Shown: positions 17,293-51,312 of the stretch, piece by piece | How the letters are laid out: each line of letters starts with the position of its first letter | Numbering within the stretch: position 1 is the first letter of the stretch | Source: Schmidtea polychroa | Taxonomy: Eukaryota | Direction: 5' to 3' | Assembly (NCBI GenBank): GCA_044892525.1 | Contig: CM097885.1 | Coordinates: forward strand, 247,504,001-247,568,000 | DNA: 64,000 bases | The notes under the pieces: generated by a model | What the model was told of the DNA's origin: nothing | What the model saw: only the letters and a program-made list of their open reading frames with translations | The model's database searches: none | Made by a program: the position numbers and the translations under genes

Positions 17293-17538
17293 TGTGAGGA
17301 AGATTTAATTATTAGCACAATATAATATTATAATAATAAATTTACATCTGAATTATTACTATTAAGAAATTAACATATACATATATTAAAGTATTATATT
17401 CGTATTATATTATGGCGTACATAATTATTATTGTTATTTATAAATGCTTAATCGTCAATTTAATGATTTGTTTAGTCAAACCGATATTGTTATAGTTTTT
17501 GAATACAATTTGAATTCGACTTCTAGTTTTATTTAACA
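17293..17538 (+). repeat. 5' LTR (246 bp)
   Basis: TGTGAGGAAG...TTTAACA; no differences from 22217-22462 found by eye. Confidence 0.97.
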
Positions 17539-34320: not shown

Positions 34321-34625
34321 CAAAGAGAATTCAATAAAATACTATAACCTTTGATTAATTCATTGTTGAGATATGATTTTTTGTTGAAAAATACTTGCTT
34401 TGTGATGACCTACAACATATCAAAAGTTAATGTTTTCATAAAATACTTTTTAATCACCAAAGCTATTTAAAAAGTTGAAACACAAACCATTTGTATCGAA
34501 TTTTTCGTCCTTTCAGCGACATAATTTCATCATGGGACATGTGTGAACATTAAGCAAGATTTTTTAAATTTGAATTTTAAATATCTTTTCAATTTATATG
34601 ACAATACAGAATTTGATTTCATTAT

Positions 34626-36141
34626 AGTAGGTAGATGTGAGCCCCATGAATCAGTATGAGTTATCGCGCATATATACCCCCCCCCCCTTGCTGATAAGTT
34701 ATTGCGCGTTTGATCGATGAGTTATAGCGCATATATTGATTTTTAAGTGCAAAGTGCAAAATGTGCAAAATGTGCAAAATGTGCAAAATGTGTAAAATTT
34801 ATTCAGGTGTGCTTTTCTTACATTAAAGATTTCACCCAGACATTTTCCACGAAAAAAGATTTGTTATTTGTCGACACAGATTAATTTATATGAAATCAAC
34901 AAAAAGATTTCTTTTCAATATATATGTCACGTTTTTAAGGAATAATTTTTGGAACATTGGGAACCAAGTATATTTAGTCGAGACATCCTTAACAAAAAAG
35001 TTGCGTCTTGATTCAACTAAGAAGATTCTTTAATAAAGATCTCGAAAAATTTCTTGGTTCTCCTAGGAATTCAGAAAGTGTAATCAATCAATATTTTTGG
35101 GCTATCTTGAGAACGAGACATATTTAGTCGAGACATCCTTAACAAAAAAGTTCAACTAAGAAGATTCCGAAATAAAATCCTCGAAAAGTTTCTTGGTTCT
35201 CCCAGGAATTAAGAAAAGGTAAAATCAATCGATAATTCTCAAAAATTCGGCTATGTCCGAATGTATTATGAATTATCACGGATTTTGATTGATGAGTTAT
35301 TGCGCGTTTGATCGATGAGCTATCGCGCATATATACCCCCACCCCCCTACTGATGAGTTATTGCGCGTTTGATCGATGAGCTATCGCGCATATATACCCC
35401 CACCCCCCTACTGATGAGTTATTGCGCGTTTGATCGATGAGTTATCGCGCATATATTGATTTTTAAGTGCAAAGTGCAGAAAGTGCAAAATGTGCAAAAT
35501 GTGCAAAATTTAGTCAGATGTGCTTTTCTTACATTAAAGATTTCACCCAGACATTGTTCACGAAAAAGATTTGTTATTTGTCGACACAGATTATTTTATA
35601 TGAAAATCAACGAAAAGATTTCTTTTCGATATAAATTTCACGTTTTTAAGGAATAATTTTTGGAACATTGGGAACCAAGTATATTTAGTCGAGACATCCT
35701 TAACAAAAAAGTTGCGTCTTGATTCAACTAAGGAGATTCCGAAATAAAATCCTCGAAAAGTTTCTTGGTTCTCCCAGGAATTAAGAAAAAGTAAAACCAA
35801 TCGATAATTCTCAAAAATTCGGCTATGTCCGACGGACTTGAAATATTTTCAACCATTCTATTTATGACAGTGCATCGTAAAATTTACATATTTTGATTCG
35901 ACTTTCAGCTTTCTATAGTAGTTTTGAATGGAGATTTCAAATCTTTGTTCAAATGTATACTGTTATTGTGTCAACTATGAATATTTGTTTAAATAAACTC
36001 ATTTGATTAATATATAGAGCCAATATAAATAGAGATATTAATACCAATGTTTTTGTTTTATATGTAATTAAAATCAGAGATGTCGAATCTTTGTTTTAAA
36101 AATTATTTTTCGCGCGCAATTTAAAAAATATTTACTATTTC
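34626..36141 (+). repeat. left TIR (1516 bp) with internal duplications
   Basis: Reverse complement of 49704-51211 apart from a few indels and substitutions. Confidence 0.95.
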
Positions 36142-36180
36142 TAATTAAATTTTCAAAACAATGAAACATTTATTAAAAAA

Positions 36181-36537
36181 CTATTTGAAATATTTATACA
36201 ATTCGTTGAGTAGAATGTTTACTGTTTGTTTTCTTTTGTAAGTAATACATTCTTGACATTGATATTGACAACATGAATCTTTTAGTAATTGAGTTTGCTT
36301 TTCATATCCATACATCATAAATTTATGGTGAAAAATAATGCGCTCTATGTTAATCCCAGTTGCCTGAAATATTTTGGCTGGTGCAATTTCCGGAGCATAA
36401 TTTATAATTTCATCTTTGATTTCCGGATAAATCTCAAACACTTTATTAATTAGAATTTCTATTTGATAATCTAAACATAATTTTAAAAATTTAAGAATAA
36501 AATATATTTATTTACCGATTTCAGAAACTTGTGACAT
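36181..36537 (-). CDS. Polinton accessory protein, ~103 aa, CCxxxCxxC motif; predicted two exons (36537-36516, 36470-36181)
   Basis: Track ORF starts at GTG; removing a 45-nt G/GTAAAT...TTTAG intron joins MSQVSEI in frame to DYQIEILINKVFEIYPE. Confidence 0.6.
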
Positions 36538-36573
36538 TGTAATAAATGAAACAAATGTTAAAGTGTACAATAT

Positions 36574-37023
36574 TTATAGTTTTTGTGAACCAATCAAATC
36601 ATTTACATCATTTATAATTTTGTTGACAATCCAATTATAATTTAGAGTTTTTAAACCAAGTACAACTATTTTTCCACTAGAAAACAAGTTTACACACAAG
36701 GGGTTATAAGATATGAGACGCAAACCCGGGAATATTTCTGGTTCATATACACATTTTGTTTTCTTTGACAAATATTGCAAATTAATTAGTTGTTTGATAT
36801 CAATAGTAATTGTACAAGATTGAAGATGAACATCTTTAATATTATAATGTATGCTTTCAATAGGTTTTTTGCAACCCATTATTCGACATTTCCCTGTCTT
36901 GAAGAATATAATTGTATAATTATCAGTTTTATCTATTATTTGCTGAGGTTTACCATAAGGAAAATTCATATTTTGTATAACTTTTAATGAAACCCGTCCA
37001 CGGTAATTAATATTTACTAACAT
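36574..37023 (-). CDS. TATA-binding protein (TBP)-like protein, 149 aa
   Basis: Two TBP repeats: LVNINY...IIFFKTGKCRIMGCK and LQSCTI...YEPEIFPGL...VNLFSSGKIVVLGLK, compared with TBP YEPELFPGL...LIFVSGKVVLTGAK. Confidence 0.88.
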   Translation of the reverse strand: MLVNINYRGRVSLKVIQNMNFPYGKPQQIIDKTDNYTIIFFKTGKCRIMGCKKPIESIHYNIKDVHLQSCTITIDIKQLINLQYLSKKTKCVYEPEIFPGLRLISYNPLCVNLFSSGKIVVLGLKTLNYNWIVNKIINDVNDLIGSQKL

Positions 37024-37180
37024 TATTGAAAATAATGGATAACTCTAGGTAATTATATTGATTATTTTAAATTTTAAATATTATTATGACAACCAAATTA
37101 TGATATCATAACAACACGATTTTTAAACAGAAACATTTATTTAATAAAAATAACATAAGATATTAACATACATAATTTCT

Positions 37181-37573
37181 TTATAATTTTCCACTTACAA
37201 TCTTCCATATAGGTAATATTGCTGTACTTGGCGCTATTTTATAACCTTGAATGCAAATTTTCATATTCCATTTAGCATTAGGTTTAAATGGGATTTGATT
37301 CTCGTCTTCATCATAAAATTTCGTTGATGGACCGCCTATGAATGAACCATTTTCATTAACTATAAGTTGCTTGTTGATTCGTCCAAATATTGTAGTAATC
37401 GCTTCTTGATCTTCTTGAGAGAATTCTTCAATCCAGTAATTGTAACTAGTTTTCACTAGTTCAACAGGAATCAACAAATTGTAATTGATCGGATTGACTA
37501 GTAAATGTATTTGATGCTCATGAAAAATATAAGTTGCTTTAAATAACGGTTGCTCATTCTTCATATTCAACAT
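37181..37573 (-). CDS. hypothetical protein, possible OB-fold ssDNA-binding protein (130 aa)
   Basis: ATG-started intact ORF; TKFYDEDEN...MKICIQGY...PIWKIV resembles the C-terminal strands of NCLDV/T7 gp2.5-type SSBs (recalled pattern, not searched). Confidence 0.5.
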   Translation of the reverse strand: MLNMKNEQPLFKATYIFHEHQIHLLVNPINYNLLIPVELVKTSYNYWIEEFSQEDQEAITTIFGRINKQLIVNENGSFIGGPSTKFYDEDENQIPFKPNAKWNMKICIQGYKIAPSTAILPIWKIVSGKL

Positions 37574-37728
37574 TTGAAATAATGATAAACTTTAAGTTCT
37601 ATACACACACTGTCTCACATACATCTCTCATTTGTTCATTTTATCAACAAATCAAATACTTGTTACATTAACCAATCAAAATATGCATTAATCTTGCATA
37701 TTAATTTCAAGATACATTCATTTTTACA

Positions 37729-38163
37729 ATGAATGAATACATAATCGCCATTGTCAATGGTTTAATTTATAAAAGTGATGATCAAACAATAAATTGTTTA
37801 TTAAAAATAATAAAAGAAGTAGAGCTTCGATGTACCATTGATTTCTCTTCTATTTTATCATCGGAAGGTAATCAGGAAAAAACATTCAAGGATGTCTTTG
37901 AATCGTTGTTTGAGGATGGTATATGTTGGTCTAAAGTCATCGTTAGCTTAATGTATGTCAGAAACATTCTTATTTTATGCCCAAATGAACATCCAAAATA
38001 TATGAACTGGTCAGTGCAAGAAATTACAAAAATATACCCATGGATCAAAGAAAATGGTGACTGGAAATATATAAAAAAATTAGAGTTACATTTTTGGTTA
38101 AGAACTATGTTTAAACGTTTCATTATATTTTTTGTCAATTTAATAAAAATTTATAAACTTTGA
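37729..38163 (+). CDS. Bcl-2-like protein (144 aa)
   Basis: BH1-like LFEDGICWSKVIVSL (Bcl-2 family LFRDGVNWGRIVAFF), BH2-like WIKENGDW (WIQENGGW), hydrophobic C-terminal tail. Confidence 0.85.
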   Translation: MNEYIIAIVNGLIYKSDDQTINCLLKIIKEVELRCTIDFSSILSSEGNQEKTFKDVFESLFEDGICWSKVIVSLMYVRNILILCPNEHPKYMNWSVQEITKIYPWIKENGDWKYIKKLELHFWLRTMFKRFIIFFVNLIKIYKL

Positions 38164-38233
38164 TAGTTAATTTAACTTGCATCAAATTCATATTTATTAC
38201 TTACATATTAATAATAACATTCTAGATCAACCT

Positions 38234-38263
38234 AGAATGTTCTAGAACATTCTAGAACATTCT
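38234..38263. promoter_or_regulatory. heat-shock element with six alternating nGAAn units
   Basis: aGAAt gTTCt aGAAc aTTCt aGAAc aTTCt; further GAAnnTTC at 38341-38348 and TTCnnGAAnnTTC at ~38366-38378; TATATAA at 38354-38360. Confidence 0.75.
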
Positions 38264-38550
38264 AGTTGATTGGTAACAATAAATATTTAGATACAATAAT
38301 TAGTTATTATTTAACTATGAACAAAATCTATGAATAAAAAGAATATTCTTAGTTATATAAAAAAATTCTAGAAGATTCTATTTGGTTGTTAACAATAGTT
38401 GCTTAGATAATTAACTATTGTTTTAATATTACATTTGAATTTCAATTAATCAATTAATTTTTATCTAACAAGTAAGATTTTATTTTGCTCTTGTTAAATA
38501 TTTATTTTCTTTTCTTTCAGATATTATTCATTCAAAATAAAAGAAGAAGA

Positions 38551-38788
38551 ATGCCAAATATTAAAAAACAAACGGTAAACTTTATTTATTTAATATATAT
38601 ATTAAGTTTTTCGTTTAGAAAATATGTTGTGATATCGATCAAGGAAATGATATGGAAGATTTCTATGATACATGTAAGTTATAAATTTTTATAATAAATT
38701 AAATTTTAATTAAATACTATTTTTTTTTAATAAATTTTATAATAAGTTAAATGTTTTAGCCGCTTTTCATAATAATACATTTAAATTA
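38551..38788 (+). CDS. putative spliced micro-ORF (~35 aa, MPNIKKQTKICCDIDQGNDMEDFYDTSAFHIIHLN)
   Basis: Consecutive GT-AG introns at 38472-38520 (UTR), 38575-38618 and 38674-38759; coding status unproven. Confidence 0.35.
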
Positions 38789-39132
38789 ATTTTTTAATGA
38801 TGGTAATACGTTCCAGTATTAATTTTATATAATACAATTAAATTAATTTTTTAATGATGGTAATACGTTCCAGTATTAATTTTATAAGTTTCGATTCTAT
38901 GTTTAATTACAATAAGAAAAGCTTTCAAAATAAATTTCAATTTGTAAAATCGAAAACCCTTCAATTTAAATCAAAAATAACCGGTAATATTTTTCCAATT
39001 GCAAACTGGTTAACTAATCAAATAAAATTCAAATTCTATAAGTTTGAATTCTGCTTTAAATATTTTTGACTAAATTATATTACTTTTAACTTCAAGTAGC
39101 AAGCATATAATAAATTATTATTTATATGGTAA

Positions 39133-39316
39133 ATTGCTGACCGGACAGACAAAATAAATCCGACTAAGGGTACTTAGGGGTAGTCACCTGGGGTTGAAAC
39201 ATAGTCTATGACCTGTCCCGAGTCAAATGAGGGTCACGTGTAAAATTTCAGCATCCTAGGTCCGACGGTGGGGAATTCTATAGAAAACAAACAAACTTTC
39301 ATCTTTATATATTAGA
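39133..39316 (-). mobile_element. small Helitron-like (Lep1-type) insertion inside the Polinton
   Basis: Minus strand begins a/TCTAATATATAAAGATGAAAGTTTGTTTG and ends GTCTGTCCGGTCAGCAAT, resembling recalled ends of such elements; GC-richer than its flanks. Confidence 0.35.
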
Positions 39317-40101
39317 TTTAATTAAGGATTATTATTTTATATATATATATATATTTTTAATAAATTAAAATTGAAAAAATAGATACAAATCTTTGTGAAT
39401 TTGAGATTTTCTTTGAGATTTTCTCCATTGGGTGTCTTTTTAAAATATAATTAATATTATATTTAAACAAATTTAAACATAAATAATGTTTGTTTAAAAA
39501 AAAAATATCAAATGGTAAAAATGACAAAAACGGTAAAAATGTCAATTGTATCGTCTTATTTATAATATTAAACTAAACAACATTAATATTTTTTTAATAA
39601 ATTTTATAATAATTTTAATTTATTTTTAATATTATTAAAATAGTATAAACATTACAAGTTATTGTTTTTGCTATCATCAATACTCTATAGGAGACGCAAA
39701 GAATTCTTTATGTACCAATAAGAATACAATATTATTGATCTAGCTTTATTGCATACTTTCCATGGTACACTGGAAATCACATCACTTGCATAATAGCTTG
39801 GTCACAGAAATCTGTATTCACGTAAACATAAGGTATGAAATCATAATCACCTCTGTTGACTAAAAAAATAGTCAATACATAGAAACTGTTTACAAATGCA
39901 TCCGTTTACCTTTAGCATTTTTAACTTATAAAGTAATGGTTTTTTGTCGGATGTCTTACACTTGAATAAAATAAACTACACATTGTTTGTGATTATAAAA
40001 CTTTTTTCTCAAAATATATGGAACACAAAAGTGAAACCCGAATTATTTTAATAAAATAAAATTCATTTAATAAATATTTAAATCATTATTTATTTTAAGG
40101 T

Positions 40102-43100
40102 GTGTTATACCCAAATTATTGTCAAAACAGTAGTCACAATAAAAGCTGTCATAAAATCATGCAAACATATTATGGCAAAACATATTATCAACAAAATTAC
40201 TTTTTATGCCCATATTGCGAAACTTTAAGTTCCGATCCCTACATGTCCTTTTATAACACGCATAAGACACATTTAAATCAATTTGTGATGCGTAAAGATA
40301 AGCTTTTCAAAAGAAAGGTTTCCACTCACTTAATTAAAAATAAAAAAGCAAGATTGGAGAAAATAGAAAATACAATATCGAACTCAGAAATAATTGTAAT
40401 CATAGATTCGGAGGAAGAAGATTCGAGGCATGAAGAAACTGGAAGTTCAAGGCGCAACGAAGCAGGAAGTTTAAGGCGTGAAGAAGTTGGAAGTTCAAGG
40501 CCTGAAGATAAGCTTATCAAAAGAAAGGTTTCCACTCACTTAATTAAAAATAAAAAAGCAAGATTGGAGAAAATAGAAAATGCAAACTCAGAAATAATTG
40601 AAATCAAGGATTCGGAGGAAGAAGATTCGAGGCATGAAGAAGCTGAAAGTTCAAGGCGTGAAGACGCTGGAAGTTCAAGGCGCGAAGAAGCTGGAAGTTC
40701 AGGGCGCGAAGAAGCTGGAAGTTCAAGGCGCGAAGACGTTGGAAGATCTGAAGAAGAAGAAATTGATATAATAAATGGATCGTTTGAAATAATAGAAGAA
40801 CTAGATTTCAATGATCAAAACGAAAATATATCGAATGTTGACAGTGATAGTACTGACTATGCAGATCACTACTCACTAGTTGATGACTTTCAAACAGGAG
40901 CAGGAATATCAGATGAACCGGAAATTGAATGTGATTTATACAGAACACATAGAATTATCACACTGGACATATCTTGTTATAATATACAAAAAATAGTTAT
41001 TCCACCAACGTTGCTGATAAAATTAAACGCTTGTATAAATGAAATGAAGAGCGTTAAGATACAGTTCGAGATCAATGCAGAATTCGTCAAAGACGGTGAG
41101 CTGAAGACTGCAAGAATTTCAAACAGAGCCACAAAATTAACAGATGACTTTTTAGATGAAGGAATCGAAAGTTTGAATGAGAAAATTGCTATTAGATCGG
41201 AGTTGGGTAGCAGTTGGCGTCTTAACAGGATACTGGAGATTAATTTTAAAATAACAAAGTTTGCCGAAATTAGTCGATTGTCTGGACATCGACATATAAG
41301 AACCCGGCATCATTAAAGAATAAAATTATAAACATCCAAAATCAAGACAATCTGTGTTTTATCTACAGCGTTTTGTCTATATTGAAATACGAAGACATTC
41401 ATGAAAACCGTAACAGACCGTCACAATATTATCGGTACATGAATGAAGTAAATTACGATTCGGAAAACCCTCCGACAACATTGAATGACATAAAGAAATT
41501 TGAAGATCAGAATCCAGGATTGGCGATCAATGTTCTCTCATACGAGTCGGATGATACATATTTAAATAATGATGATGATGTTGTTATGAAACATCCGAAT
41601 ATAGACATAATTAGGAGGACAAAGGTTAAAGATGTTACACCAATATATTTATTATTACTAAGTGAAAGTAATAATTACCATTACGTTGGAATACCTAATA
41701 TCAACAGGTTAATGAACTGTCATGTATCCAATAATTGTACAGTTCGAATTCAATGTATATGGTGTGTAAATTGTCTAAATGGATTTCGGAGACAATTGAC
41801 ATATGAAAGACATCTGGCTTTATGTAAGAAAAATCAGCTTGGGACAACTTTGTACGTTATGCCAACAGAAAAAGAGCTCAGATTCAAAGATTGGTCGAAG
41901 AAAGTGACTCCACCTTTCGTAATCTATGCTGATTTCGAATCTATTTTACCAGACGATCAGCAATACCATCAGAAACACTTACCGATTTCAGCTGGACTTT
42001 TGCTGATAAACAATTTTAGCGGAGCTTCCTCATATTTTCAATTTATTGGGTTAAATTGTATATTTGATTTTTTAAAGAAAGTAGAGGAAATAGCAGAAAA
42101 TAAAGTAAATCATTATTACCAGAGAAATGGTAAACAACCTTTAATTCTCAGTCCAACGGAACAATCCTCTTTTAATATGCAATCATTTTGTTATATATGT
42201 AAGGAACACTGTGATCATTTGGTTCGAGATCATGATCATTTCAGCGGGAAATATTTAGGTGCGGCATGTGGAAAATGTAATCTTTCAAGAAGAGTACGTC
42301 GAGTGCTTCCAGTAGTATTTCATAACCTGAGAGGTTATGATATGCATCATATTTTAAAATATGGCATAAATAAATTCCCTCACTGGAATTTGAGTTGTAT
42401 TCCGACAACATCCGAAAAATTTCTTACGCTTATTGCGCATTGTAAGCAAATAAAGATCAAATTCATTGATTCATATCAGTTTGTAAATGAATCTTTGGAT
42501 AATGCAGTAAAAACAATAAACAGTTTACCAATTACAAATGCAGCATTTACGGGAACAATACAGGATTCAAAAGGTATTTTTCCATACAATTTTGCCACAA
42601 GCCTGGAAGTTCTACGAGAAACCAGAGAATTGCCACCAATTTGGGAAGGAGTGTCACAAGCCGCATATGATAAAGCAGTGAACATATGGTCTGAAACCGG
42701 ATGTGAAACCCTTTTAGACTATATGATGATATATCTAAAGTTGGATGTATATCTTTTAGCAGATTACTTTCAACAATTCAGAACTAAATCACTAGCCCAT
42801 AATGGATTGGAACCTTTAAATTTTTTCGGTATTCCGGGAATGACATGGGCATCGGCATTAATGTCATTGGATAGACCTATTGAATTGTTGCAAGATAATG
42901 AAATGTATAATTATTATGAAGCTGGCATTCGAGGAGGTATGACTTTCGTTAATAAACATCAAGTCAGAAGAGATGAAAATACAGAGTTATTATATATCGA
43001 TATAAATAACTTGTATGGATGGGCACTTAGTCAGAGTTTGCCATATGGAAAGTTTGAATGGATCCATACTGATTTGGACACTATTCTAGAAGAGTGTAAA

Positions 43101-44243
43101 TCATCAAACATAGAGAATTTACCATATGGATATACGTTGGAGGTTGATATGAATATTCCAGATGAAATTCATGATTTATTAGACGATTTACCTGTTGCAC
43201 CAGAGAAGATGTGTCCAGAAGGAACAAAAGTGGAAAAGCTTCTGTTAACACATTACCCGAAGAAAAACTATGTAATTCATTGGCGACTATTGAAAATGTA
43301 TATGTTTTTAGGAGTTGAAGTAACAAATATACATCGGGCAATCAAGTTTAACCAATCAACTATTTTCAAGGAATATGTGGAAGCCAACACCAAATTGAGG
43401 GCTCAATCAACATCTGAACTGGAGAAGGGATATTATAAACTATTAAACAACAGTTTATATGGGAAAACAGTGGAAAATTTAAAGAAGAGGATGAATTTAA
43501 GGTTGTGCAATTCACAAAGAAAAATGGTAACATATTCATCAAAACCAACCTTCAAGAGAAGTATAAAGATTGCAGATGATTTAATAGCTGCAATTATGAA
43601 CCCTGATGTTGTATGTTTGGATAGACCTTCGTATATTGGACAAACAGTTTTAGATCTCTCCAAACTAAGAATGTATGAGCTGCAGTATATAGAACTACAA
43701 AAGTACCGTGAACAGTTCAATTGTGAGATTAATATAGCAGCAGGGGATACGGATTCGTTCTTCTTGGAAATTAAGAATCTTAAATTGCAAACATTATTAG
43801 AAGCTATGATCCAAGATAATCTATTGGATGCATCTAATTATAATTCGTCTCATCCGCTGTATAACAGAAGATTAGATTCTGTTATAGGAAAGTTTAAGGA
43901 TGAAAGTAAGGGAGTCCTATATGATGAATGGATATTTCTTCGGCCAAAGCTTTATAGTTTGTTGGGTGGTCCAAAGAAAACTATTAAAGCCAAAGGTATT
44001 AGATTGAATGAAACTGAGATAGATCATCAATCATACATCGACTGTTTTAATGGAATGGAAATACCTAAAGTCATACAAACGAGGCTTGGGTCCAAAAATC
44101 ATCAACTTTACACATTTAAATCAACAAAGTTGGCTCTGTCAAATAAGGATGATAAAAGGGTATGGGTGGGTCGGAACAAAAGTTTTGCATATGGACACTA
44201 TAGTATAAATATTGTTGATAATGATGATAATATATTTGCATGA
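40102..44243 (+). CDS. polB: protein-primed DNA polymerase B, split by a one-base frameshift near 41303 (~1380 aa if joined)
   Basis: YIDINNLYG, KLLNNSLYGK and GDTDS motifs; endonuclease VII-like CYIC...RDHDH...ACGKCN insert; INIQNQDNLCF lies upstream of the 41373 ORF in the same frame. Confidence 0.95.
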
Positions 44244-44388
44244 TTATATGTGAAATCAACTGTCAAATTTCCTTAAACAGACATTCTATTTTTTATGTAT
44301 ATAAAGAGTTGTTATTGTTATTTAATAAAATATTGTACAAAAACTGTGTTATTTTAGTTATTTTTGAAAATAAAGAAATGAACACCAA

Positions 44389-44773
44389 CTAATATTTATT
44401 AAACTCAAAACATAACCAAACAATACAATGTTGTCCACATGTAACTGTTAGCGGTTCTTGATAACGAATTCTATTGTACACGATAGGTTTTGATAATTTC
44501 GACAACTTCGACACTAACAGAGGCGGATAATAGTAACCCATCGGATCAAACACTTTAATCTTTTCAGGTTTAACAAATACTGCTAGCCAATGTTCGCCAT
44601 CGAGACTTGATGATTGGGTATTGACTATTAAAGCATTGTTACTTTCAAGAAAAGGGATTTTATCCAGCGGATAAACTCCTAAAAACCTGTCTCCAAACAG
44701 ATTTGTTGCAATACAATTAAGCTGAACAGAACTAATCAAGTAAATCGTTTATTAGAAAGTAAACTTACTCCAT
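44389..44773 (-). CDS. adenain-like cysteine protease; predicted 5-nt first exon plus 37-nt intron (115 aa)
   Basis: GEHW, VFDPMG and YQ...TCGQHC catalytic motifs; ATG GA/GTAAGT...TTAG/T TCT GTT gives MDSVQL. Confidence 0.9.
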
Positions 44774-44803
44774 ACTTCAACTTACTCCATACTTCATCTT
44801 TGT

Positions 44804-46033
44804 TTAAACTAGAATTGACCGATTTGCTGAAATCTGTATTTCGCTTTCAAAAACTCCATAAATAATTACATATACAGGAGATGTTAAAGCCTTGTTGAAT
44901 TTAATATCAAGTCTCAGATTTCCATTTTGTGGCAATTGACTTTGATTCCAATCAAAGTCTGAAGCCAAAATGAATGTAAAGAAAGGATATTTGGTCTTAA
45001 AATCTACAATGTCGATTCCGCAATTTAAATTCTTATCTAAATAACCCATATTTCGAACTATAGATTGCATATAGGTCGCAGCATAGTTATCGTTGTCGAA
45101 ATCTTGAGTATATGTCTCACGATAATCGGAATTTTTTGATAAAGTTAAAGAAGTTATACTGAAATGTGCGAATTTTGAGCTAGTTTCTGTATATGAACCA
45201 TTATATTGTGCTTCTGATTGGAAGGTTACAAGAATAAAATTTGGCAAACGTTTATCGCCAAATATTTGTTCTTTATAAAATGAGGATGAATCTTTACTTA
45301 TTGCAAAGGCAACAATTTCTTTGGTTTTGATAGGATAAATCGCATGTTGTGAATTAAGACCAATCTGATGGCCTGCCAACACTGATGACTCAACTCGTAC
45401 ACGGCTAACCATTAATTTTGCATCAACCAACTGATATTTTGGTGATGCTCCAGCTACAGATGTATCCAAACAAAATTTTGAGTCTGATCTCTTCATACGA
45501 ATATGTACATTGACTCCTGGTAGTAAATATTTAGGCTGATCCATAAAATCTAGTTGTAATGATGAACACATTGAAAACAGTCTTGATTTCGCAATCCATG
45601 TTTTCCTAAAATCTTTACTTCCATAACCCATCGGCGCAAGACAAATACTTTTTGTATCTCCGTTATAGTTTAAAATTGTTTCAATTAAAGCTTTGTGTGC
45701 ATATGTGTTGTTGCCACTTTCGATTTTGATATTATTAAAACCCAGAATAACATCTTTAAATAGAGTATGAAACATGTAGTTGGTTGGAATTACATCAACA
45801 CCATCTGCCAGATCTTTATTGTCTTTATCTACAACCTTCAGTTGAATGGATAATAGAGTGTCATTCAAATCTAAATATTCAGTCTGTGAACCGTTAACAA
45901 AAAATTCTACATCATTCCTTGAATCAGTAATTGAATTCATAGGAAATACATCTTCAAATATTCCATTTTCAATTACTACTTGTGGAGACGGACGATCAAA
46001 AATACACAATTCAGTTTTACCGGAGATCATCAT
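44804..46033 (-). CDS. double jelly-roll major capsid protein (409 aa from ATG 46033)
   Basis: N-terminal KTELCIFDRPSPQ, YLDLNDTLLSIQLKV and C-terminal GNLRLDIKF..L...V.VIIYG.FE match Polinton MCP. Confidence 0.92.
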   Translation of the reverse strand: MMISGKTELCIFDRPSPQVVIENGIFEDVFPMNSITDSRNDVEFFVNGSQTEYLDLNDTLLSIQLKVVDKDNKDLADGVDVIPTNYMFHTLFKDVILGFNNIKIESGNNTYAHKALIETILNYNGDTKSICLAPMGYGSKDFRKTWIAKSRLFSMCSSLQLDFMDQPKYLLPGVNVHIRMKRSDSKFCLDTSVAGASPKYQLVDAKLMVSRVRVESSVLAGHQIGLNSQHAIYPIKTKEIVAFAISKDSSSFYKEQIFGDKRLPNFILVTFQSEAQYNGSYTETSSKFAHFSITSLTLSKNSDYRETYTQDFDNDNYAATYMQSIVRNMGYLDKNLNCGIDIVDFKTKYPFFTFILASDFDWNQSQLPQNGNLRLDIKFNKALTSPVYVIIYGVFESEIQISANRSILV

Positions 46034-46406
46034 TTTCGAATATTGTTCCACGACCTTTCCATCTTTTGTTTATACGAGATTTTCGTCGCTTACTCAAAAT
46101 TTGTTGTGGTGTTGATGTTGGAGGTTTTTTAGTTTCATTTGGTTTAGAAATCTTTGCTGCACTTGGCATCAATTTCCCAATTTCATTCATTGCATGTCTT
46201 TTCAATGTTGGTAGTATTTTTTGATCTTTCATTACCACATCCTTTGCTGTTCTCATGCCAAATGAACCAATCTTTTTAAGTATTGGAAGTGCGAACCTTC
46301 CAATTGTTTGCAACCATCCGGATCCATATTGCTTACCCATAAAATATGGTAATTCTCCACCAGTTTGACTATTACTATATAACGACACAATATCAGGATA
46401 AGACAT
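46017..46406 (-). CDS. basic virion core / membrane-active protein with Gly-Gly-type cleavage sites
   Basis: QTGG and QYGSG followed by amphipathic WLQTIGRFALPILKKIG; Lys/Arg-rich tail; conserved position upstream of MCP. Confidence 0.7.
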   Translation of the reverse strand: MSYPDIVSLYSNSQTGGELPYFMGKQYGSGWLQTIGRFALPILKKIGSFGMRTAKDVVMKDQKILPTLKRHAMNEIGKLMPSAAKISKPNETKKPPTSTPQQILSKRRKSRINKRWKGRGTIFENDDLR

Positions 46407-47409
46407 TCACCTTTCGAAAATGTAAAGTCAAATGGGTTTTTGAATCTTTTGAAAAGTTTATCAATTTTCCAGAATCATCACGTATATTAATTTCTATATT
46501 GTTTATACATGATGTTGCAACAGATAAATACATAGGATTTTCAATCGTTATCTGTACCACTTCATCTTGTTCATGCTTTTCAACCCATACTGCTTTCATT
46601 AGAGGAACACTTACATCACCAACAATTACAGATTCAACAATATTACTATAAATGAACATTTGCTGATGAAGTTTAATTATTTTTGGTTTCGATGTTCCTT
46701 CGTTAACTTTTAAGTTTTGTATATACGTTTCTTTTGATAATCCTAATGTCTTTACCAAATTAGAGTCAAATTTCATTTGGCCAACATTCGGATTCATTTG
46801 AAATTTAAAAAATTTGTCTAATTCAACAACAGCGAAAATATCTGCACAATGTTTTGTTAAATAAACTTTTAATTGATCAAGATCTGTAATATACAAATCA
46901 TCTTGAAATGTATAGCTATGCTCAACAGCTTTGTTATACAAGAGTTGAAATTTGAATATAGCATCAGTTTTTGGAAGAGTATCAATATCAAATTTCACCG
47001 TTTCATCAAAAGTGTTACGCAATAGAGTAAATCCTAGGCGTTTTGCATCAGTTAAGGTTTCAAATAAAAATTGAAATGGTCGCTTCAAACATTGAAAGTA
47101 TAAATATCTATCCTCAACATATATTATCGCATTTGTATTTGCTTGATTGATCATTTCATAGCTATCTTGAATTATCTGCACTTTGACAATTTCTGATACT
47201 GATTCCATCTTGGTATATTCAATCTTGGATTTACTGTAAAACGGAAAGAGATTGTATACAAATGTAAAACCCAACAAGGACACTTCCCAACTACCATTTA
47301 AATAGATTGGATTTTGAAGTTCGACAATAAATTTACTGGCATTGTTATTTGGATGAATTAAAGGAGAGCTATTGGTGGGTAAAATCATGTAAAAATTAGT
47401 TTTATTCAT
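46393..47409 (-). CDS. penton (single jelly-roll minor capsid protein), 338 aa from ATG 47409
   Basis: FYMILPTNSS..HPNN.ASKF.VEL..PI.L.GSWEVSL at the N-terminus; YSNIVE..IVGD..PL and I.I.IRD..G..I.F at the C-terminus. Confidence 0.9.
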   Translation of the reverse strand: MNKTNFYMILPTNSSPLIHPNNNASKFIVELQNPIYLNGSWEVSLLGFTFVYNLFPFYSKSKIEYTKMESVSEIVKVQIIQDSYEMINQANTNAIIYVEDRYLYFQCLKRPFQFLFETLTDAKRLGFTLLRNTFDETVKFDIDTLPKTDAIFKFQLLYNKAVEHSYTFQDDLYITDLDQLKVYLTKHCADIFAVVELDKFFKFQMNPNVGQMKFDSNLVKTLGLSKETYIQNLKVNEGTSKPKIIKLHQQMFIYSNIVESVIVGDVSVPLMKAVWVEKHEQDEVVQITIENPMYLSVATSCINNIEINIRDDSGKLINFSKDSKTHLTLHFRKVNVLS

Positions 47410-48428
47410 TTCAACTGAGATTCCAGTATCCAAGTAGGGTTTTGATAACCATGCCATTTGACATAATATTGTTTATGCTTCCCTTTTCCTCTGGTCTTTA
47501 GAATTTCTTGTATTCTAAAAGTTGTAGGACTTGGAATAACTTGTAATTCTTGTTCATAAAATTTACCTATAATTTCATTGTTATCATAATCCTTAATGAC
47601 ATACATTATTGGACTCTGTTTAGTGTTAATCTTCGAAATTTGAAAAACTTCGTCGCTCCAATTACTATCAAAGTTTTTAATGAATGGAGAAGCACTAATT
47701 TTTGATATTCTTACATAATCACTGATTTTATATTTTGCTTTCTTGGGTTTTGGAACTTGTCGAGATAACCATAATTTGACTTGATTATCATTTGAAACAT
47801 CAACTGGTCTTAATCCATTTAAACCACGGTGCGAGGAATGATTATATGAATGAATCAGATTTTGTAAAACATGTATCCATGTCTTATTGCCTTGATGTAC
47901 AAAATACTTTTTCAATTTATCTCTCAATGTACGATTAAATCGTTCGACATAGGCTGCCTTATATTGAGAATGAACAGTGTAGTGATTTACATGATTTTCT
48001 TTTAGAATTTGTTTAACTTTACTGTTGTAAAATTCCTTACCCAAATCAGTTTGCAAATTATCGGGATGTCCATCAGCAAATAAACTCTTTATTGCTTGAG
48101 CAATTTCACTAGCAGATTTAGTTTTAACAGGTATAGCTCTCGCAAATCGGCTAAATATGTCAATACATGTTAAAATATATTTGTAACCTTTGTTGATACT
48201 GGAATATGGAATCATTTCCAACAAATCCGCTTGCCATAAATCATCAATACCAAATGTTTTATATGCTCTTGTTGGAAATCTTTTTAACATCGGTTTGTTG
48301 AGACTGTATGCAAGTTGGCTTGATAACCAATTTCTTGTCTCTTTCTTTGATTTCTTCATTGCTTTCTGTAGTCTGTCGATTCCGCCGAAAGATGCTGGGT
48401 CTCTTGGATTTGTCCAAATTTTCTCCAT
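47406..48428 (-). CDS. int: retroviral-like DDE integrase with C-terminal chromodomain (340 aa from ATG 48428)
   Basis: WQADL, IDIFSRFA, LQTDLGKEF, VERFNRTL; ILKTRG...YYVKWHGY..TWI chromodomain. Confidence 0.95.
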   Translation of the reverse strand: MEKIWTNPRDPASFGGIDRLQKAMKKSKKETRNWLSSQLAYSLNKPMLKRFPTRAYKTFGIDDLWQADLLEMIPYSSINKGYKYILTCIDIFSRFARAIPVKTKSASEIAQAIKSLFADGHPDNLQTDLGKEFYNSKVKQILKENHVNHYTVHSQYKAAYVERFNRTLRDKLKKYFVHQGNKTWIHVLQNLIHSYNHSSHRGLNGLRPVDVSNDNQVKLWLSRQVPKPKKAKYKISDYVRISKISASPFIKNFDSNWSDEVFQISKINTKQSPIMYVIKDYDNNEIIGKFYEQELQVIPSPTTFRIQEILKTRGKGKHKQYYVKWHGYQNPTWILESQLK

Positions 48429-48489
48429 TGCAACAATTTGAATTAAAATCAAGTTTGAAATTCGGTAATGAAGGACTACCACCCATTGT

Positions 48490-49092
48490 TTATGAACTTC
48501 GACTTCCTAATAAACCTGCTCCACCTAATAAAGATAATGCAAGAGGAATTAATGCAGCTATAAATCCTCCTTGTTGTTTATACATAATCTTTCTCATTTG
48601 TTTTTTGTTTTTGCTATTTACAAGTGATAGAAGCGATTTCTTGTGTTTTTCCAAAATATGTTTTCTTGCACTGCTTATATTTATCTTCCCATGTACAACT
48701 TTCATTATAATATCAAGTAAATCATCTATCACAAATGTAGGGAATGTTTGTAAAATTATCATTCTTGATTGTTTAGGAGCCTTCAACAAAGAATTAAAAT
48801 ATGGTAAGCTTCTTGGAATTTTGATTTTTCTAGATGCTATAAAATCTTTAGGTTTTTGTTTTGATAATTGAAACTCTTTTGGTTCAGTGTAACTGGTTTT
48901 CAGTGGAATTTTATTTGCAATTTTATTTGTAATTTTCCTCTTCTTACGCTTTGCAATCAAATTCTTCAATTTCTTTGAAGGTTTGATAATTACTTTTTGA
49001 AAAGACATTATTAATCTTTTCAAGTGATCAACTTTGTTTATATACTGTTGCACCGTTTTTGTTAAATATATCTGTTCGAACTCGTAATTCAT
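48490..49092 (-). CDS. basic Polinton structural protein ending QQGG-FIAALIPLALSLLGG (start may be ATG 49008)
   Basis: Lys-rich body with a C-terminal QxGG site and hydrophobic helix, as seen in Polinton core proteins. Confidence 0.7.
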   Translation of the reverse strand: MNYEFEQIYLTKTVQQYINKVDHLKRLIMSFQKVIIKPSKKLKNLIAKRKKRKITNKIANKIPLKTSYTEPKEFQLSKQKPKDFIASRKIKIPRSLPYFNSLLKAPKQSRMIILQTFPTFVIDDLLDIIMKVVHGKINISSARKHILEKHKKSLLSLVNSKNKKQMRKIMYKQQGGFIAALIPLALSLLGGAGLLGSRSS

Positions 49093-49651
49093 CCGAACAT
49101 TTTTGGGTAAAGTCTAGAAATAAATATCCATGGGGAATTTTAGTTGCATCTTGAAATGCTTCTAGTAGAAACTTCCTATTGTTTGGGTATGCTTGTCTTG
49201 CTAGAAAATCAATGACTGTTGCATCTCTAGGGTTTTTAAAAATTGTTAGATAATGTACATTTAAATTACGAGTTCTATGATTTCCTCCTTGATGGAAAAG
49301 ATTTTGGGTTATAAAAATAACTGTAACTCCAACATGTCTAGAAATCTTTGTAAACAAATTATTAAATTCCTTTTCTTTGTTGGCTTCTTGATATAAATCA
49401 TCAATGATGATGACATCTCTCTTTTGTAAACGTTTTGTCCAATCTTTATCAAACCCTTTTATAATTTTCATTTGTACTTTACAGAATTCTGAATGCGTCA
49501 AACCATTTTCAGTTTCTGAACCTCGATGCCAATATATTTTGTTGAATTTTTCAACAAACAAATTAGACTGAAGCAATTTACATACAAAAAGCGTTTTACC
49601 GCTTCCACTAGGACCGACAATTTGATAAACAGCTTCATTTTGTAATTCCAT
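49028..49651 (-). CDS. FtsK/A32-family genome-packaging ATPase
   Basis: Walker A GPSGSGKT, Walker B IIIDD, SRH..VTVIFITQNLF; TATATAAA on the minus strand at 49684-49677. Confidence 0.95.
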   Translation of the reverse strand: MELQNEAVYQIVGPSGSGKTLFVCKLLQSNLFVEKFNKIYWHRGSETENGLTHSEFCKVQMKIIKGFDKDWTKRLQKRDVIIIDDLYQEANKEKEFNNLFTKISRHVGVTVIFITQNLFHQGGNHRTRNLNVHYLTIFKNPRDATVIDFLARQAYPNNRKFLLEAFQDATKIPHGYLFLDFTQKCSDELRVRTDIFNKNGATVYKQS

Positions 49652-49703
49652 TTAAAAAGATGTACTACAAATATTGTTTATATAATGAGTCGAAAAACAT
49701 GTT

Positions 49704-51211
49704 GAAATAGTTAATATTTTTTAAATTGCGCGCGAAAAATAATTTTTAAAACAAAGATTCGACATCTCTGATTTTAATTACATATAAAACAAAAACATTG
49801 GTATTAATATCTCTATTTATATTGGCTCTATATATTAATCAAATGAGTTTATTTAAACAAATATTCATAGTTGACACAATAACAGTATACATTTGAACAA
49901 AGATTTGAAATCTCCATTCAAAACTACTATAGAAAGCTGAAAGTCGAATCAAAATATGTAAATTTTACGATGCACTGTCATAAATAGAATGGTTGAAAAT
50001 ATTTCAAGTCCGTCGGACATAGCCGAATTTTTGAGAATTATCGATTGGTTTTACTTTTTCTTAATTCCTGGGAGAACCAAGAAACTTTTCGAGGATTTTA
50101 TTTCGGAATCTCCTTAGTTGAATCAAGACGCAACTTTTTTGTTAAGGATGTCTCGACTAAATATACTTGGTTCCCAATGTTCCAAAAATTATTCCTTAAA
50201 AACGTGAAATTTATATCGAAAAGAAATCTTTTCGTTGATTTTCATATAAAATAATCTGTGTCGACAAATAACAAATCTTTTTCGTGAACAATGTCTGGGT
50301 GAAATCTTTAATGTAAGAAAAGCACATCTGACTAAATTTTGCACATTTTGCACATTTTGCACTTTCTGCACTTTGCACTTAAAAATCAATATATGCGCGA
50401 TAACTCATCGATCAAACGCGCAATAACTCATCAGTAGGGGGGTGGGGGTATATATGCGCGATAGCTCATCGATCAAACGCGCAATAACTCATCAGTAGGG
50501 GGGTGGGGGTATATATGCGCGATAGCTCATCGATCAAACGCGCAATAACTCATCAATCAAAATCCGTGATAATTCATAATACATTCGGACATAGCCGAAT
50601 TTTTGAGAATTATCGATTGATTTTACCTTTTCTTAATTCCTGGGAGAACCAAGAAACTTTTCGAGGATTTTATTTCGGAATCTTCTTAGTTGAATCAAGA
50701 CGCAACTTTTTTGTTAAGGATGTCTCGACTAAATATGTCTCGTTCTCAAGATAGCCCAAAAATATTGATTGATTACACTTTCTGAATTCCTAGGAGAACC
50801 AAGAAATTTTTCGAGATCTTTATTAAAGAATCTTCTTAGTTGAATCAAGACGCAACTTTTTTGTTAAGGATGTCTCGACTAAATATACTTGGTTCCCAAT
50901 GTTCCAAAAATTATTCCTTAAAAACGTGACATATATATTGAAAAGAAATCTTTTTGTTGATTTCATATAAATTAATCTGTGTCGACAAATAACAAATCTT
51001 TTTTCGTGGAAAATGTCTGGGTGAAATCTTTAATGTAAGAAAAGCACACCTGAATAAATTTTACACATTTTTGCACATTTTGCACTTTGCACTTAAAAAT
51101 CAATATATGCGCGATAACTCATCGATCAAACGCGCAATAACTTATCAGCAAGGGGGGGGTATATATGCGCGATAACTCATACTGATTCATGGGGCTCACA
51201 TCTACCTAACT
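49704..51211 (-). repeat. right TIR (1508 bp)
   Basis: Inverted copy of 34626-36141. Confidence 0.95.
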
Positions 51212-51312
51212 CATTATATTGATAGTTATCTTCTCTTTCCTACGGTGGAGAAGAGAGAATTTTCCAACTGTGGAGACACGAAACTAATTTGCATAAAGTT
51301 TTTATTGAAAAC

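What the first reader, a model, noticed from the sequence alone, without database searches (positions are those of the whole stretch)
34626..51211. Near-intact Polinton/adintovirus-like element with an unusual regulatory left arm
Seen: exact boundaries (CATTAT TSD, 1.5-kb TIRs), a full virion and replication gene set, and a ~4-kb left-arm cassette (Cys-rich ORF, TBP-like, SSB-like, Bcl-2-like, heat-shock promoter). Established: Polintons encode PolB, INT, ATPase, protease, MCP and penton, and are thought to form virions. Inference: this lineage has added transcription-initiation, replication-accessory, anti-apoptotic and stress-sensing functions, a lifestyle closer to an inducible provirus than a transposon. 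I do not know of this combination being described.
Basis: partly seen in the sequence, partly recalled or inferred. Interest (0 to 1): 0.9.

Follow-up and report, generated by a model that had tools for sequence, protein, structure and literature searches.

The report
Integrated Polinton virus with TBP–SSB–Bcl-2 genes
This is a recently integrated, almost intact Polinton/adintovirus-like virus in an AT-rich animal-type genome; its extra genes (a compact TATA-binding protein, a single-strand-DNA-binding-like protein, a Bcl-2 homologue) are real, and the first two occur throughout a metagenome-only clade, so it is a new member of a known kind, not a new kind.

Summary
The element spans 34626-51211, with a CATTAT target-site duplication, 5'-AG..CT-3' ends and ~1.5-kb inverted repeats (1503 matches, 4 mismatches). 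It encodes PolB, an rve/chromo integrase, an A32-type ATPase, an adenain-like protease and a double jelly-roll capsid protein confirmed by fold. A penton is assigned by position only. PolB carries one frameshift; every other gene reads through.

The left arm holds a TBP-like gene (Pfam 1.9e-14), an OB-fold protein closest to T7 gp2.5-type SSBs, a Bcl-2 homologue just above Pfam's cut-off, and a six-unit heat-shock-element array.

- The TBP gene sits in 70 related metagenomic loci (plus two further loci of a contig already counted), all Polinton-like where the contig is long enough to tell. It usually lies next to the SSB-like gene and is under purifying selection.
- Bcl-2 is shared only with one sub-lineage.
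- The heat-shock array is seen only in this copy.
- New here: virion genes, but not the accessory genes or PolB, carry a conserved TATAAACAA motif about 30-40 nt upstream.

Bcl2 homologues in adintoviruses, and TBP in related viruses, were already reported (Starrett 2021). Interest is moderate.

The parts
34620..34625 (.). Left copy of the 6-bp target-site duplication (CATTAT)
34626..51211 (.). Whole element, 16,586 bp, with 5'-AG...CT-3' termini
34626..36141 (.). Left terminal inverted repeat. It is built from two ~0.71-kb units about 92% alike, and contains 61-bp and 9-bp sub-repeats that repeat the terminal motif.
36181..36441 (-). Weakly supported as a gene.
   Evidence: only a 29-residue motif is shared with the 138-150-aa ORF in L005-L010; no Pfam or PHROG match
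36574..37023 (-). Compact TBP-like protein, 149 aa. The C-terminal TBP repeat is clear; the N-terminal repeat is shortened.
37181..37573 (-). OB-fold protein, 130 aa, structurally closest to T7 gp2.5-type single-stranded-DNA-binding proteins
   Evidence: no sequence-level match
37729..38163 (+). Bcl-2 family homologue, 144 aa, with BH1/BH2-like motifs and a hydrophobic C-terminal tail
38219..38266 (.). Array of about six alternating nGAAn/nTTCn units, a canonical heat-shock-element pattern
38366..38378 (.). Second, three-unit heat-shock element. It lies in a 48-nt direct repeat of the first module.
38164..40158 (.). AT-rich stretch with no convincing ORF and no homology to any relative. It contains the heat-shock elements, 57-bp tandem repeats and a GC-richer island at about 39130-39290.
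40159..44243 (+). Protein-primed family-B DNA polymerase gene. It has an N-terminal Cys/His motif, an in-frame 204-bp tandem duplication, an Endonuclease-VII-like motif and the polymerase core. It is broken once, by one frameshift, with no internal stops.
44389..44739 (-). Adenain-like cysteine protease, 116 aa
44804..46033 (-). Double jelly-roll major capsid protein, 409 aa
46017..46406 (-). Small conserved virion-module protein, 129 aa, function unknown
46393..47457 (-). Putative penton or minor capsid protein, 354 aa, assigned by position only. It has two or three tandem paralogues in some relatives.
47406..48428 (-). rve-type integrase with a C-terminal chromodomain-like end
48490..49092 (-). 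ORF of 200 aa whose C-terminal ~110 aa are conserved; Gly-rich hydrophobic C-terminus
49028..49651 (-). A32/FtsK-HerA-type genome-packaging ATPase, 207 aa
49674..49680 (-). TATAAACAA-type motif (7-mer core) 29 nt upstream of the ATPase ATG
48486..48492 (-). The same motif core 64 nt upstream of the integrase ATG
47469..47475 (-). The same motif core 18 nt upstream of the 354-aa gene
46499..46505 (-). The same motif core 99 nt upstream of the 129-aa gene
46066..46072 (-). The same motif core 39 nt upstream of the capsid gene
44800..44806 (-). The same motif core 67 nt upstream of the protease gene
49704..51211 (.). Right terminal inverted repeat
51212..51217 (.). Right copy of the target-site duplication (CATTAT)

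Best explanation
This is a young, integrated copy of an adintovirus-like Polinton (Maverick) virus. It belongs to a clade so far seen only in metagenomes and unannotated assemblies.

Shown:
- The element was inserted by an rve-type integrase mechanism: 6-bp duplication, AG/CT ends and nearly identical 1.5-kb terminal repeats.
- It carries a complete morphogenesis module: a double jelly-roll capsid protein, a putative penton, a packaging ATPase, an adenain-like protease and small core proteins.
- It carries a protein-primed PolB that has one frameshift.

Inferred, an adenovirus-like division of labour:
- An 'early' set, made of the TBP-like protein, the gp2.5-like OB-fold SSB, the Bcl-2 homologue and PolB, lacks the late motif and would be read by host machinery.
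- The SSB would coat displaced strands during protein-primed replication from the terminal repeats.
- The Bcl-2 homologue would hold off apoptosis.
- The compact viral TBP would recognise the conserved TATAAACAA element that sits about 30-40 nt upstream of virion-module start codons, and so switch on capsid production.

The heat-shock-element array is a candidate stress-responsive enhancer acquired by this copy alone. No evidence here links it to the element's own expression.
For: - Anatomy and integrity.
- Capsid fold.
- Clade-wide TBP gene inside PolB+INT+ATPase+MCP elements.
- TBP under purifying selection: median dN/dS 0.34 over 131 pairs, 122 of them below 0.5.
- TBP C-repeat with both Phe positions invariant (F98, F114), plus F41 invariant and F21 nearly so in the N-half.
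- w130 homologues neighbour TBP in 32 loci. The model has pLDDT 95. Its best PDB matches are the Enc34 SSB, T7 gp2.5, ASFV CP312R and RPA OB folds. Twenty BFVD matches reach E<=1e-3, with TM up to 0.71.
- Bcl-2.
- Motif: TAAACAA lies upstream of 6 of 7 virion genes and 0 of 5 early genes in the window. In relatives the figures are 47/76 against 4/90, Fisher p 1e-16. ATAAACA is in 56/75 upstream regions against 3.4 expected, with a peak at -40 to -31.
- TBP genes carry a different upstream motif, ATCATAAT, in 16/54 against 1.2 expected.
Against: - No expression, binding or replication data exist.
- TATAAA is also the host consensus, so the late motif could be served by host TBP alone.
- The SSB assignment is at fold level only. 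No PDB match reaches E<=1e-3. The acidic C-terminal tail typical of gp2.5 is absent. dN/dS for this family is high (median 0.68).
- The Bcl-2 match is only just above Pfam's cut-off.
- PolB is frameshifted, so this copy may be unable to replicate, unless the frameshift is an assembly error.
- Related upstream sequences are not phylogenetically independent, so the motif statistics are inflated.
- The host species is unidentified.
Confidence: 0.72

Rival explanations
1. This is an ordinary endogenous Polinton whose accessory ORFs are passenger genes picked up from hosts, with no role in the element's own cycle. The cassette would be cargo and not a regulatory arm.
For: Accessory content varies among relatives: RING fingers, an E2 ubiquitin-conjugating enzyme, a C48 peptidase, LRR and C2H2 proteins. 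The position of the cassette also varies. Bcl-2 is found only in two lineages, at 23% identity.
Against: TBP is present in every one of 70 related loci recovered through it. Its length stays near 149 aa and its dN/dS is about 0.34. It is at most 31% identical to cellular TBPs, so it is not a recent capture. The TBP/SSB-like pairing persists through rearrangements.
Confidence: 0.12
2. The heat-shock-element array makes this copy a heat-inducible provirus. On this reading, stress-activated HSF drives transcription of early genes from the 38.2-38.4 kb region.
For: The array has six contiguous perfect nGAAn units plus a second trimer 100 nt away. All five matches in 64 kb lie within 150 nt. The array sits between the Bcl-2 gene and PolB. 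A TATA-like run and a reversed CCAAT lie nearby.
Against: There is no four-unit array in any of the 72 related loci then in hand, and three-unit matches in 75 are at chance level and inside ORFs. The surrounding 1.9 kb has no homology to relatives and no ORF conserved with them. The array is 3' of Bcl-2 and about 1.9 kb from the PolB start. It may belong to a nested or captured host fragment.
Confidence: 0.15
3. The 130-aa OB-fold protein is not a replication SSB. It could be another OB-fold function, such as a DNA-end or terminal-protein partner, or a transcription co-factor of the adjacent TBP.
For: There is no sequence-level match to any SSB. The best PDB Foldseek E-value is 0.047. It lacks the acidic C-tail. 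It is tightly linked to TBP and not to PolB.
Against: The top structural matches in two libraries are consistently gp2.5-type SSBs or their giant-virus counterparts, including the ASFV CP312R SSB and ranavirus P31K. Protein-primed replicons generally need an SSB; this last point is from established knowledge of phi29 and adenovirus.
Confidence: 0.2

Closest known systems
Polintons/Mavericks (Kapitonov & Jurka 2006; Krupovic, Bamford & Koonin 2014), class Polintoviricetes
   Same: Protein-primed PolB, rve integrase, long terminal inverted repeats, 6-bp target-site duplication, AG/CT ends, double jelly-roll capsid protein, A32-type ATPase and adenain-like protease. All of these were found here.
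   Different: It carries a conserved TBP-like gene and an OB-fold SSB-like gene, plus Bcl-2 in this lineage. The closest named PolB proteins (a beetle, an abalone) are only 30-33% identical.
Adintoviruses (Starrett et al. 2021, PMC8502044; Buck et al. 2024, 10.1101/2024.03.25.586562)
   Same: The gene order ATPase-integrase-penton-small protein-hexon-adenain facing PolB, and an integrase with a chromodomain-like end. Anti-apoptotic Bcl2 and IAP homologues are reported in adintoviruses, and TBP is reported in MELD viruses with adintovirus-like PolB. Duplicate pentons are also reported.
   Different: The OTU-like PolB domain that defines the group was not detected by Pfam (0 of 26). No named adintovirus protein came back in any search, so Alpha or Beta placement is untested. 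A gp2.5-like SSB and a TATAAACAA late motif were not found in the papers searched.
Adenovirus early/late programme (E1B-19K, E2A DBP, major late promoter)
   Same: By analogy only: a protein-primed linear dsDNA virus with an anti-apoptotic Bcl-2-like function, its own ssDNA-binding protein, and TATA-dependent late expression of capsid genes.
   Different: There is no sequence relationship between the accessory proteins. Adenoviruses use host TBP and have no integrase.
T7 gp2.5-type SSBs of phages and giant viruses (Enc34 SSB, PMC5686142; ASFV CP312R; iridovirus P31K)
   Same: OB fold with the helix between strands 3 and 4. These are the best structural matches in both libraries.
   Different: It is much smaller, at 130 aa. 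It has no acidic C-terminal tail and no detectable sequence similarity.

Membership tests
Polinton/Maverick | Protein-primed family-B DNA polymerase | tested here: met
   Pfam DNA_pol_B_2 5.9e-34. There are 519 relatives. The gene has one frameshift.
Polinton/Maverick | Retrovirus-like (rve) integrase | tested here: met
   Pfam rve 1.1e-11, 45.3 bits against a cut-off of 32.6
Polinton/Maverick | Long terminal inverted repeats, 6-bp target-site duplication, 5'-AG...CT-3' ends | tested here: met
Polinton/Maverick | Double jelly-roll major capsid protein | tested here: met
   AlphaFold2 pLDDT 90; Foldseek E 6e-16 to 1e-12 against the SGIV, PBCV-1, Sputnik and mavirus capsid proteins
Polinton/Maverick | Single jelly-roll penton protein | tested here: inconclusive
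   The 354-aa gene sits in the expected place but has no Pfam, PDB-profile or PHROG match.
Polinton/Maverick | A32/FtsK-type packaging ATPase and adenain-like protease | tested here: met
   Pox_A32 35 bits against 22.8. Peptidase_C5 22.2 bits against 21.3, which is marginal.
Adintoviridae (as defined by Buck et al. 2024) | [quoted passage not shown] | tested here: inconclusive
   Pfam OTU matched 0 of 26 full-length relatives, while Endonuclease_7 matched 26 of 26. The PDB profile found only phi29 polymerase at E 0.09. The list of invariant columns includes an Asp, a Cys and a His in the N-terminal third, which permits a Cys protease but does not show one.
Adintoviridae | Hexon recognisable by BLASTp against the Alpha or Beta reference hexons | not testable with these tools
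   None of the 169 capsid homologues carries a name. Reference proteins of animal viruses may not be fetched here.
Adintoviridae | Integrase with a C-terminal chromodomain | tested here: inconclusive
   Pfam Chromo at residues 323-348, 18.7 bits, below the cut-off of 25.1. It is marked 'faint' in relatives.
TATA-binding protein (PF00352) | TBP repeat with the two DNA-kinking phenylalanines | tested here: met
   The C-terminal repeat scores 53.7 bits against 22.9. It aligns with archaeal TBP repeats, including both Phe positions. F98 and F114 are invariant in 40 sequences.
TATA-binding protein (PF00352) | Two repeats forming the saddle | tested here: inconclusive
   The N-half is only about 62 aa. 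N-half against C-half by hhalign gives E 0.009 over 54 columns. F41 is invariant and F21 nearly so.
Bcl-2 family (PF00452) | Bcl-2 homology fold with BH1 and BH2 motifs | tested here: met
   Pfam 32.7 bits against 31.4. Bcl-xL 1.7e-4 with the W-containing BH1 and the BH2 Trp-Gly-Trp region aligned. Pro- or anti-apoptotic activity cannot be tested here.
T7 gp2.5-type SSB | OB fold of the gp2.5 type | tested here: met
   pLDDT 95.2. PDB best match Enc34 SSB, probability 0.94, TM 0.44-0.49, E 0.047. BFVD has 20 matches at E<=1e-3, with TM up to 0.71. This is fold-level evidence only.
T7 gp2.5-type SSB | Acidic C-terminal tail that contacts the polymerase | tested here: not met
   The C-terminus of the 130-aa protein is not acidic (translation). 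For that reason it is filed as 'gp2.5-like fold' and not as a member.
Heat-shock element | At least three contiguous inverted nGAAn units | tested here: met
   About six units at 38219-38266 and three at 38366-38378. HSF binding and promoter activity cannot be tested here.

The most novel reading that the evidence does not exclude
A widespread clade of animal-associated Polinton-like viruses runs its own two-step transcription programme. On this reading, a virus-encoded miniature TBP reads a conserved TATAAACAA late promoter in front of each virion gene, while a gp2.5-like SSB serves protein-primed replication. In this genome one young copy has additionally acquired a strong heat-shock enhancer, which would tie provirus expression to host stress.
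Probability: 0.2. Interest if true: 0.75.

Novelty: new member of a known kind. Interest (0 to 1): 0.42.

Why it matters
Polintons are thought to be viruses that live mostly as genome residents, but how they regulate their genes is unknown. Two results give a concrete hypothesis for early/late control in this group. The first is a clade in which every member found carries its own TBP and usually an SSB-like partner. The second is a TATA-like motif in front of virion genes but not early genes. The hypothesis can be examined with existing sequence, expression and structure data. The copy itself is ordinary in its core. Two of its accessory gene types, Bcl2 and TBP, are already in the adintovirus literature.

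Tried and rejected
- Exact-protein look-ups of the window's TBP, Bcl-2 and ATPase found no record, so the host could not be identified and no second copy was found that way. One further look-up was not sent because the queue was full.
- IMG/VR holds no TBP relative.
- Rfam and tRNA scans found nothing. Bacterial promoter and terminator scans were uninformative.
- I considered an intron in place of a frameshift in PolB and rejected it, because the relatives have one continuous ORF.
- The f160 family found next to TBP in one sub-clade is not a divergent SSB (hhalign E 0.52) and is absent from the window.
- Splice-like signals around 38.52-38.68 kb were noticed.
- dN/dS for Bcl-2 could not be estimated, because every pair is either saturated or nearly identical.
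- The supplements of Starrett et al. are not held, so I could not see which genomes carry TBP or Bcl2.

Slips, declared:
1. Those bounds bracket the break.
2. While reasoning I read the consensus line that the aligner printed for the PolB family, and I thought about where the break lies relative to a motif. Nothing from that is used in this report, and nothing was deleted.

Full report

Yes. Inverted repeats of about 1.5 kb lie at 34628-36141 and 49704-51208. Aligned end to end, they show 1503 matches, 4 mismatches and a handful of small gaps. The sequence CATTAT flanks both ends, at 34620-34625 and 51212-51217. A 6-bp duplication with AG/CT ends is the classical Polinton signature; this point is from established knowledge (Kapitonov & Jurka 2006).

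Each repeat is itself made of two ~0.71-kb units about 92% alike. It also contains 61-bp and 9-bp sub-repeats that reiterate the terminal motif.

The surrounding DNA is 21-30% G+C. It carries a Ty3/gypsy element and a mariner-type remnant. It also carries decayed pieces of older, related Polintons at 31970-33423 and about 60367-60718. This is therefore a true chromosomal insertion in a repeat-rich region that has been invaded before.

**2. Core genes**

| Gene | Evidence |
|---|---|
| PolB | Pfam DNA_pol_B_2, 5.9e-34 |
| Integrase | rve 1.1e-11, with a weak chromodomain match at its end |
| Packaging ATPase | Pox_A32, 35 bits against cut-off 22.8 |
| Protease | Peptidase_C5, 22.2 bits against cut-off 21.3 |
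| 409-aa capsid protein | no Pfam match; 169 homologues; model pLDDT 90; Foldseek E 6e-16 and upward against the double jelly-roll capsid proteins of an iridovirus, PBCV-1, Sputnik and mavirus |
| 354-aa protein | in the penton position; no match in Pfam, in a PDB profile search or in PHROGs; remains 'putative' |

Integrity was checked against proteins of eight related loci. Every gene except PolB aligns end to end in a single frame.

Full-length PolB relatives are 1191-1256 aa. They align from their first residues across the long ORF that lies 5' of the polymerase ORF, and they do so in two frames. That 5' ORF is therefore part of PolB, not a separate 'Oncoid'-type gene. The gene is broken once, by one frameshift, with no internal stops. 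It also carries an in-frame 204-bp tandem duplication. Whether the frameshift is biological or an assembly error cannot be told from the window.

**3. The left arm**

- **TBP-like gene (36574-37023).** It matches Pfam TBP at 53.7 bits against a cut-off of 22.9, and solved archaeal and eukaryotic TBPs down to 5e-11.
  - The match covers the C-terminal repeat, including both phenylalanines that kink DNA in TBP.
  - The N-terminal half is too short for a full repeat, but resembles the C-half weakly (hhalign E 0.009).
  - The N-half has one invariant and one nearly invariant Phe at comparable places.
- **130-aa protein (37181-37573).** It has no sequence-level match, but 45 homologues exist among 1.8 billion representatives.
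  - The model built on them is very confident (pLDDT 95.2) and shows OB-fold topology.
  - In the PDB the best matches are the phage Enc34 SSB, T7 gp2.5, ASFV CP312R and RPA subunits. All are weak (best E 0.047, TM 0.44-0.49).
  - In BFVD, 20 giant-virus proteins match at E<=1e-3 with TM up to 0.71, and ranavirus P31K also matches (E 5.3e-3).
  - From my own knowledge (Kazlauskas & Venclovas 2012), these are the gp2.5-like SSBs of nucleocytoplasmic large DNA viruses.
  - The protein lacks the acidic tail of gp2.5, so I call it gp2.5-like in fold, not a member.
- **Bcl-2-like gene (37729-38163).** It passes Pfam's cut-off narrowly (32.7 against 31.4). It aligns with Bcl-xL across BH1 and BH2 (1.7e-4) and ends in a hydrophobic tail.
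- **Small ORF (36181-36441).** It shares only a 29-residue motif with one group of relatives.
- **Heat-shock elements.** All five three-unit matches in the whole window fall within 38235-38378, against 1.16 expected. They form a six-unit array plus a second trimer.

**4. Relatives**

The TBP-like protein has 40 close relatives of conserved length, 43-62% identical. All come from metagenomes or unannotated assemblies. Their contigs, plus 62 further loci from JGI metagenomes, make 72 loci in all, 70 of them related. Soil-type samples appear to be among the JGI sources, judged from memory of the accession series; no tool reported the sample types. Every contig long enough to judge is a PolB + integrase + ATPase + capsid element of the same family. 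Identities to the window are:

| Protein | Identity to the window |
|---|---|
| ATPase | 62-77% |
| Capsid protein | 41-66% |
| Integrase | 49-72% |

The SSB-like gene is the usual immediate neighbour of TBP, in 32 loci. The cassette's position differs between lineages:

- mostly just upstream of the ATPase;
- in one sub-clade between the protease and the 3' end of PolB;
- in the L005-L010 group beyond the ATPase, together with a Bcl-2 gene;
- only in the window at the end distal to the ATPase.

Other accessory genes vary: RING, E2, C48 peptidase, LRR and C2H2 proteins. A ~160-aa family present in 24 loci is missing from the window.

Selection, as median dN/dS:

| Gene | Median dN/dS | Note |
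|---|---|---|
| TBP | 0.34 | 131 unsaturated pairs, 122 below 0.5 |
| ATPase | 0.11 | |
| Capsid protein | 0.10 | one unsaturated pair |
| SSB-like family | 0.68 | 32 pairs; weak constraint or saturation |
| Bcl-2 | not estimable | |

The heat-shock array has no counterpart. No four-unit array occurs in 72 loci. Three-unit matches in 75 loci are at chance level and inside ORFs. The 1.9-kb stretch around the array has no nucleotide or translated similarity to any relative.

**5. A promoter motif (new here)**

In the window, the 7-mer TAAACAA, usually preceded by TA, lies upstream of six of the seven virion-module genes. It lies upstream of none of the five other genes.

- In relatives it occurs within 100 nt upstream of 47 of 76 virion-module genes, against 4 of 90 TBP, SSB-like, Bcl-2 and PolB genes (Fisher p 1e-16).
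- It peaks at -40 to -31 from the ATG.
- ATAAACA occurs in 56 of 75 virion-gene upstream regions against 3.4 expected.
- Upstream of the ATPase the motif persists although the neighbouring gene differs between lineages. That argues for a promoter element and against a coding constraint.
- TBP genes carry a different enriched motif, ATCATAAT, in 16 of 54 against 1.2 expected.
- These counts are inflated by shared ancestry, but the contrast between gene classes is large.

**6. How it most likely works**

Shown: it is an integrated, young, nearly complete virus-like element. It has a capsid module, a replication gene and conserved accessory genes, and it has two classes of upstream motif.

Inferred:
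- An early set (TBP-like, SSB-like, Bcl-2, PolB) is read by host factors.
- The SSB-like protein supports strand-displacement, protein-primed replication from the terminal repeats.
- Bcl-2 delays host cell death.
- The viral TBP recognises the TATA-like late motif and turns on virion genes.

This resembles the adenovirus logic, without any sequence kinship of the accessory proteins. Host TBP could equally serve a TATAAA-type motif, so this link is a hypothesis. I put about 0.35 on the viral TBP being the reader of that motif. The heat-shock array is best treated as a copy-specific acquisition of unknown consequence.

**7. Comparison with what is known**

All testable Polinton features are met. 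The penton is inconclusive.

For Adintoviridae as defined by Buck et al. (10.1101/2024.03.25.586562):
- The OTU-like PolB domain was not detected.
- The chromodomain is below threshold.
- The hexon criterion could not be tested.

I therefore call it adintovirus-like.

Starrett et al. (PMC8502044) already record 'Oncoid' genes upstream of PolB, Bcl2 and IAP homologues in adintoviruses, and TBP in MELD viruses with adintovirus-like PolB. Duplicate pentons are also on record. In the library searched I found no report of the following:
- a gp2.5-like SSB in Polintons;
- the TBP/SSB pairing;
- a conserved late motif.

That search covers open-access text only.

**8. Verdict**

This is a new member of a known kind, with some new details at clade level. 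Interest is moderate (0.42).

Slips are declared under 'tried and rejected'.

Noticed in passing
window 31970-33423 (-) and about 60367-60718 (-): These are decayed fragments of older related Polintons. One is an integrase+ATPase remnant (65-76% nucleotide identity across three aligned pieces; the ATPase part 72%) just 1.2 kb left of the intact element. The other is a PolB fragment on the right. The region has been invaded repeatedly.
   Followed up: partly
window 17538-22249 (+): An apparently intact Ty3/gypsy-type retrotransposon. It has a 387-aa gag with zinc knuckles and a 1175-aa pol with protease, RT, RNase H and integrase domains.
   Followed up: partly
window 6526-7104 (-) and 23878-24633 (-): One ORF has a weak Mos1-type HTH match (mariner remnant). 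Another, of 252 aa, has a weak GIY-YIG match. Both are below Pfam's cut-offs.
   Followed up: no
window 40295-40761: An in-frame 204-bp tandem duplication and 24-bp repeats, encoding acidic and Ser/Arg-rich stretches, lie in the 5' part of PolB. In some relatives (three of the six tested) the alignment breaks into separate pieces upstream of the polymerase part.
   Followed up: partly
window 34626-36141 and 49704-51211: Each terminal repeat consists of two ~0.71-kb units about 92% alike. The terminal ~100-nt motif recurs internally as 61-bp repeats. These may be binding sites for replication or integration proteins. The repeats have no similarity to those of relatives.
   Followed up: partly
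window 39130-39290: A GC-richer island of about 160 nt inside the AT-rich non-coding stretch. It has no Rfam match and no other copy in the window. It may be a small nested insertion.
   Followed up: partly
window 38520-38680: Short open stretches bounded by AG and GT, with an ATG at 38553 that is the first one downstream of the heat-shock elements.
   Followed up: no
L005-L010 about 3961-6985; L019 5616-7687: The putative penton gene is present as three (L005 group) or two (L019) tandem paralogues, 27-39% identical to the window's single copy.
   Followed up: partly
L005-L010 and L073 (ENA assemblies ERZ2271472-ERZ2272806): Contigs of 13.7-16.3 kb from at least six samples are 99.1-99.6% identical to one another. 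They rank second or third in size in their assemblies. This suggests a multi-copy or episomal element in a repeatedly sequenced host. PolB starts 392 nt from one contig end.
   Followed up: partly
L001 6320-6739, L054 1710-2168, L019 225-719, L075 708-1565, L048 1918-3327: Relatives carry other host-like accessory genes: RING fingers, an E2 ubiquitin-conjugating enzyme, a C48 (Ulp1-type) peptidase and a leucine-rich-repeat protein.
   Followed up: partly
24 related loci (e.g. L005 1480-1959, L036 ORF of 161 aa): A conserved ~160-aa protein family of unknown function lies between the protease or capsid genes and PolB. It is absent from the window element.
   Followed up: partly
upstream of TBP genes in 16 of 54 related loci; window about 37100: A second enriched motif, ATCATAAT, lies upstream of TBP genes. 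It is distinct from the virion-gene motif.
   Followed up: partly
window, ten N runs (e.g. 1185-1335, 11328-11697, 53213-53372): These are masked or gap stretches outside the element. I left them as they are.
   Followed up: no
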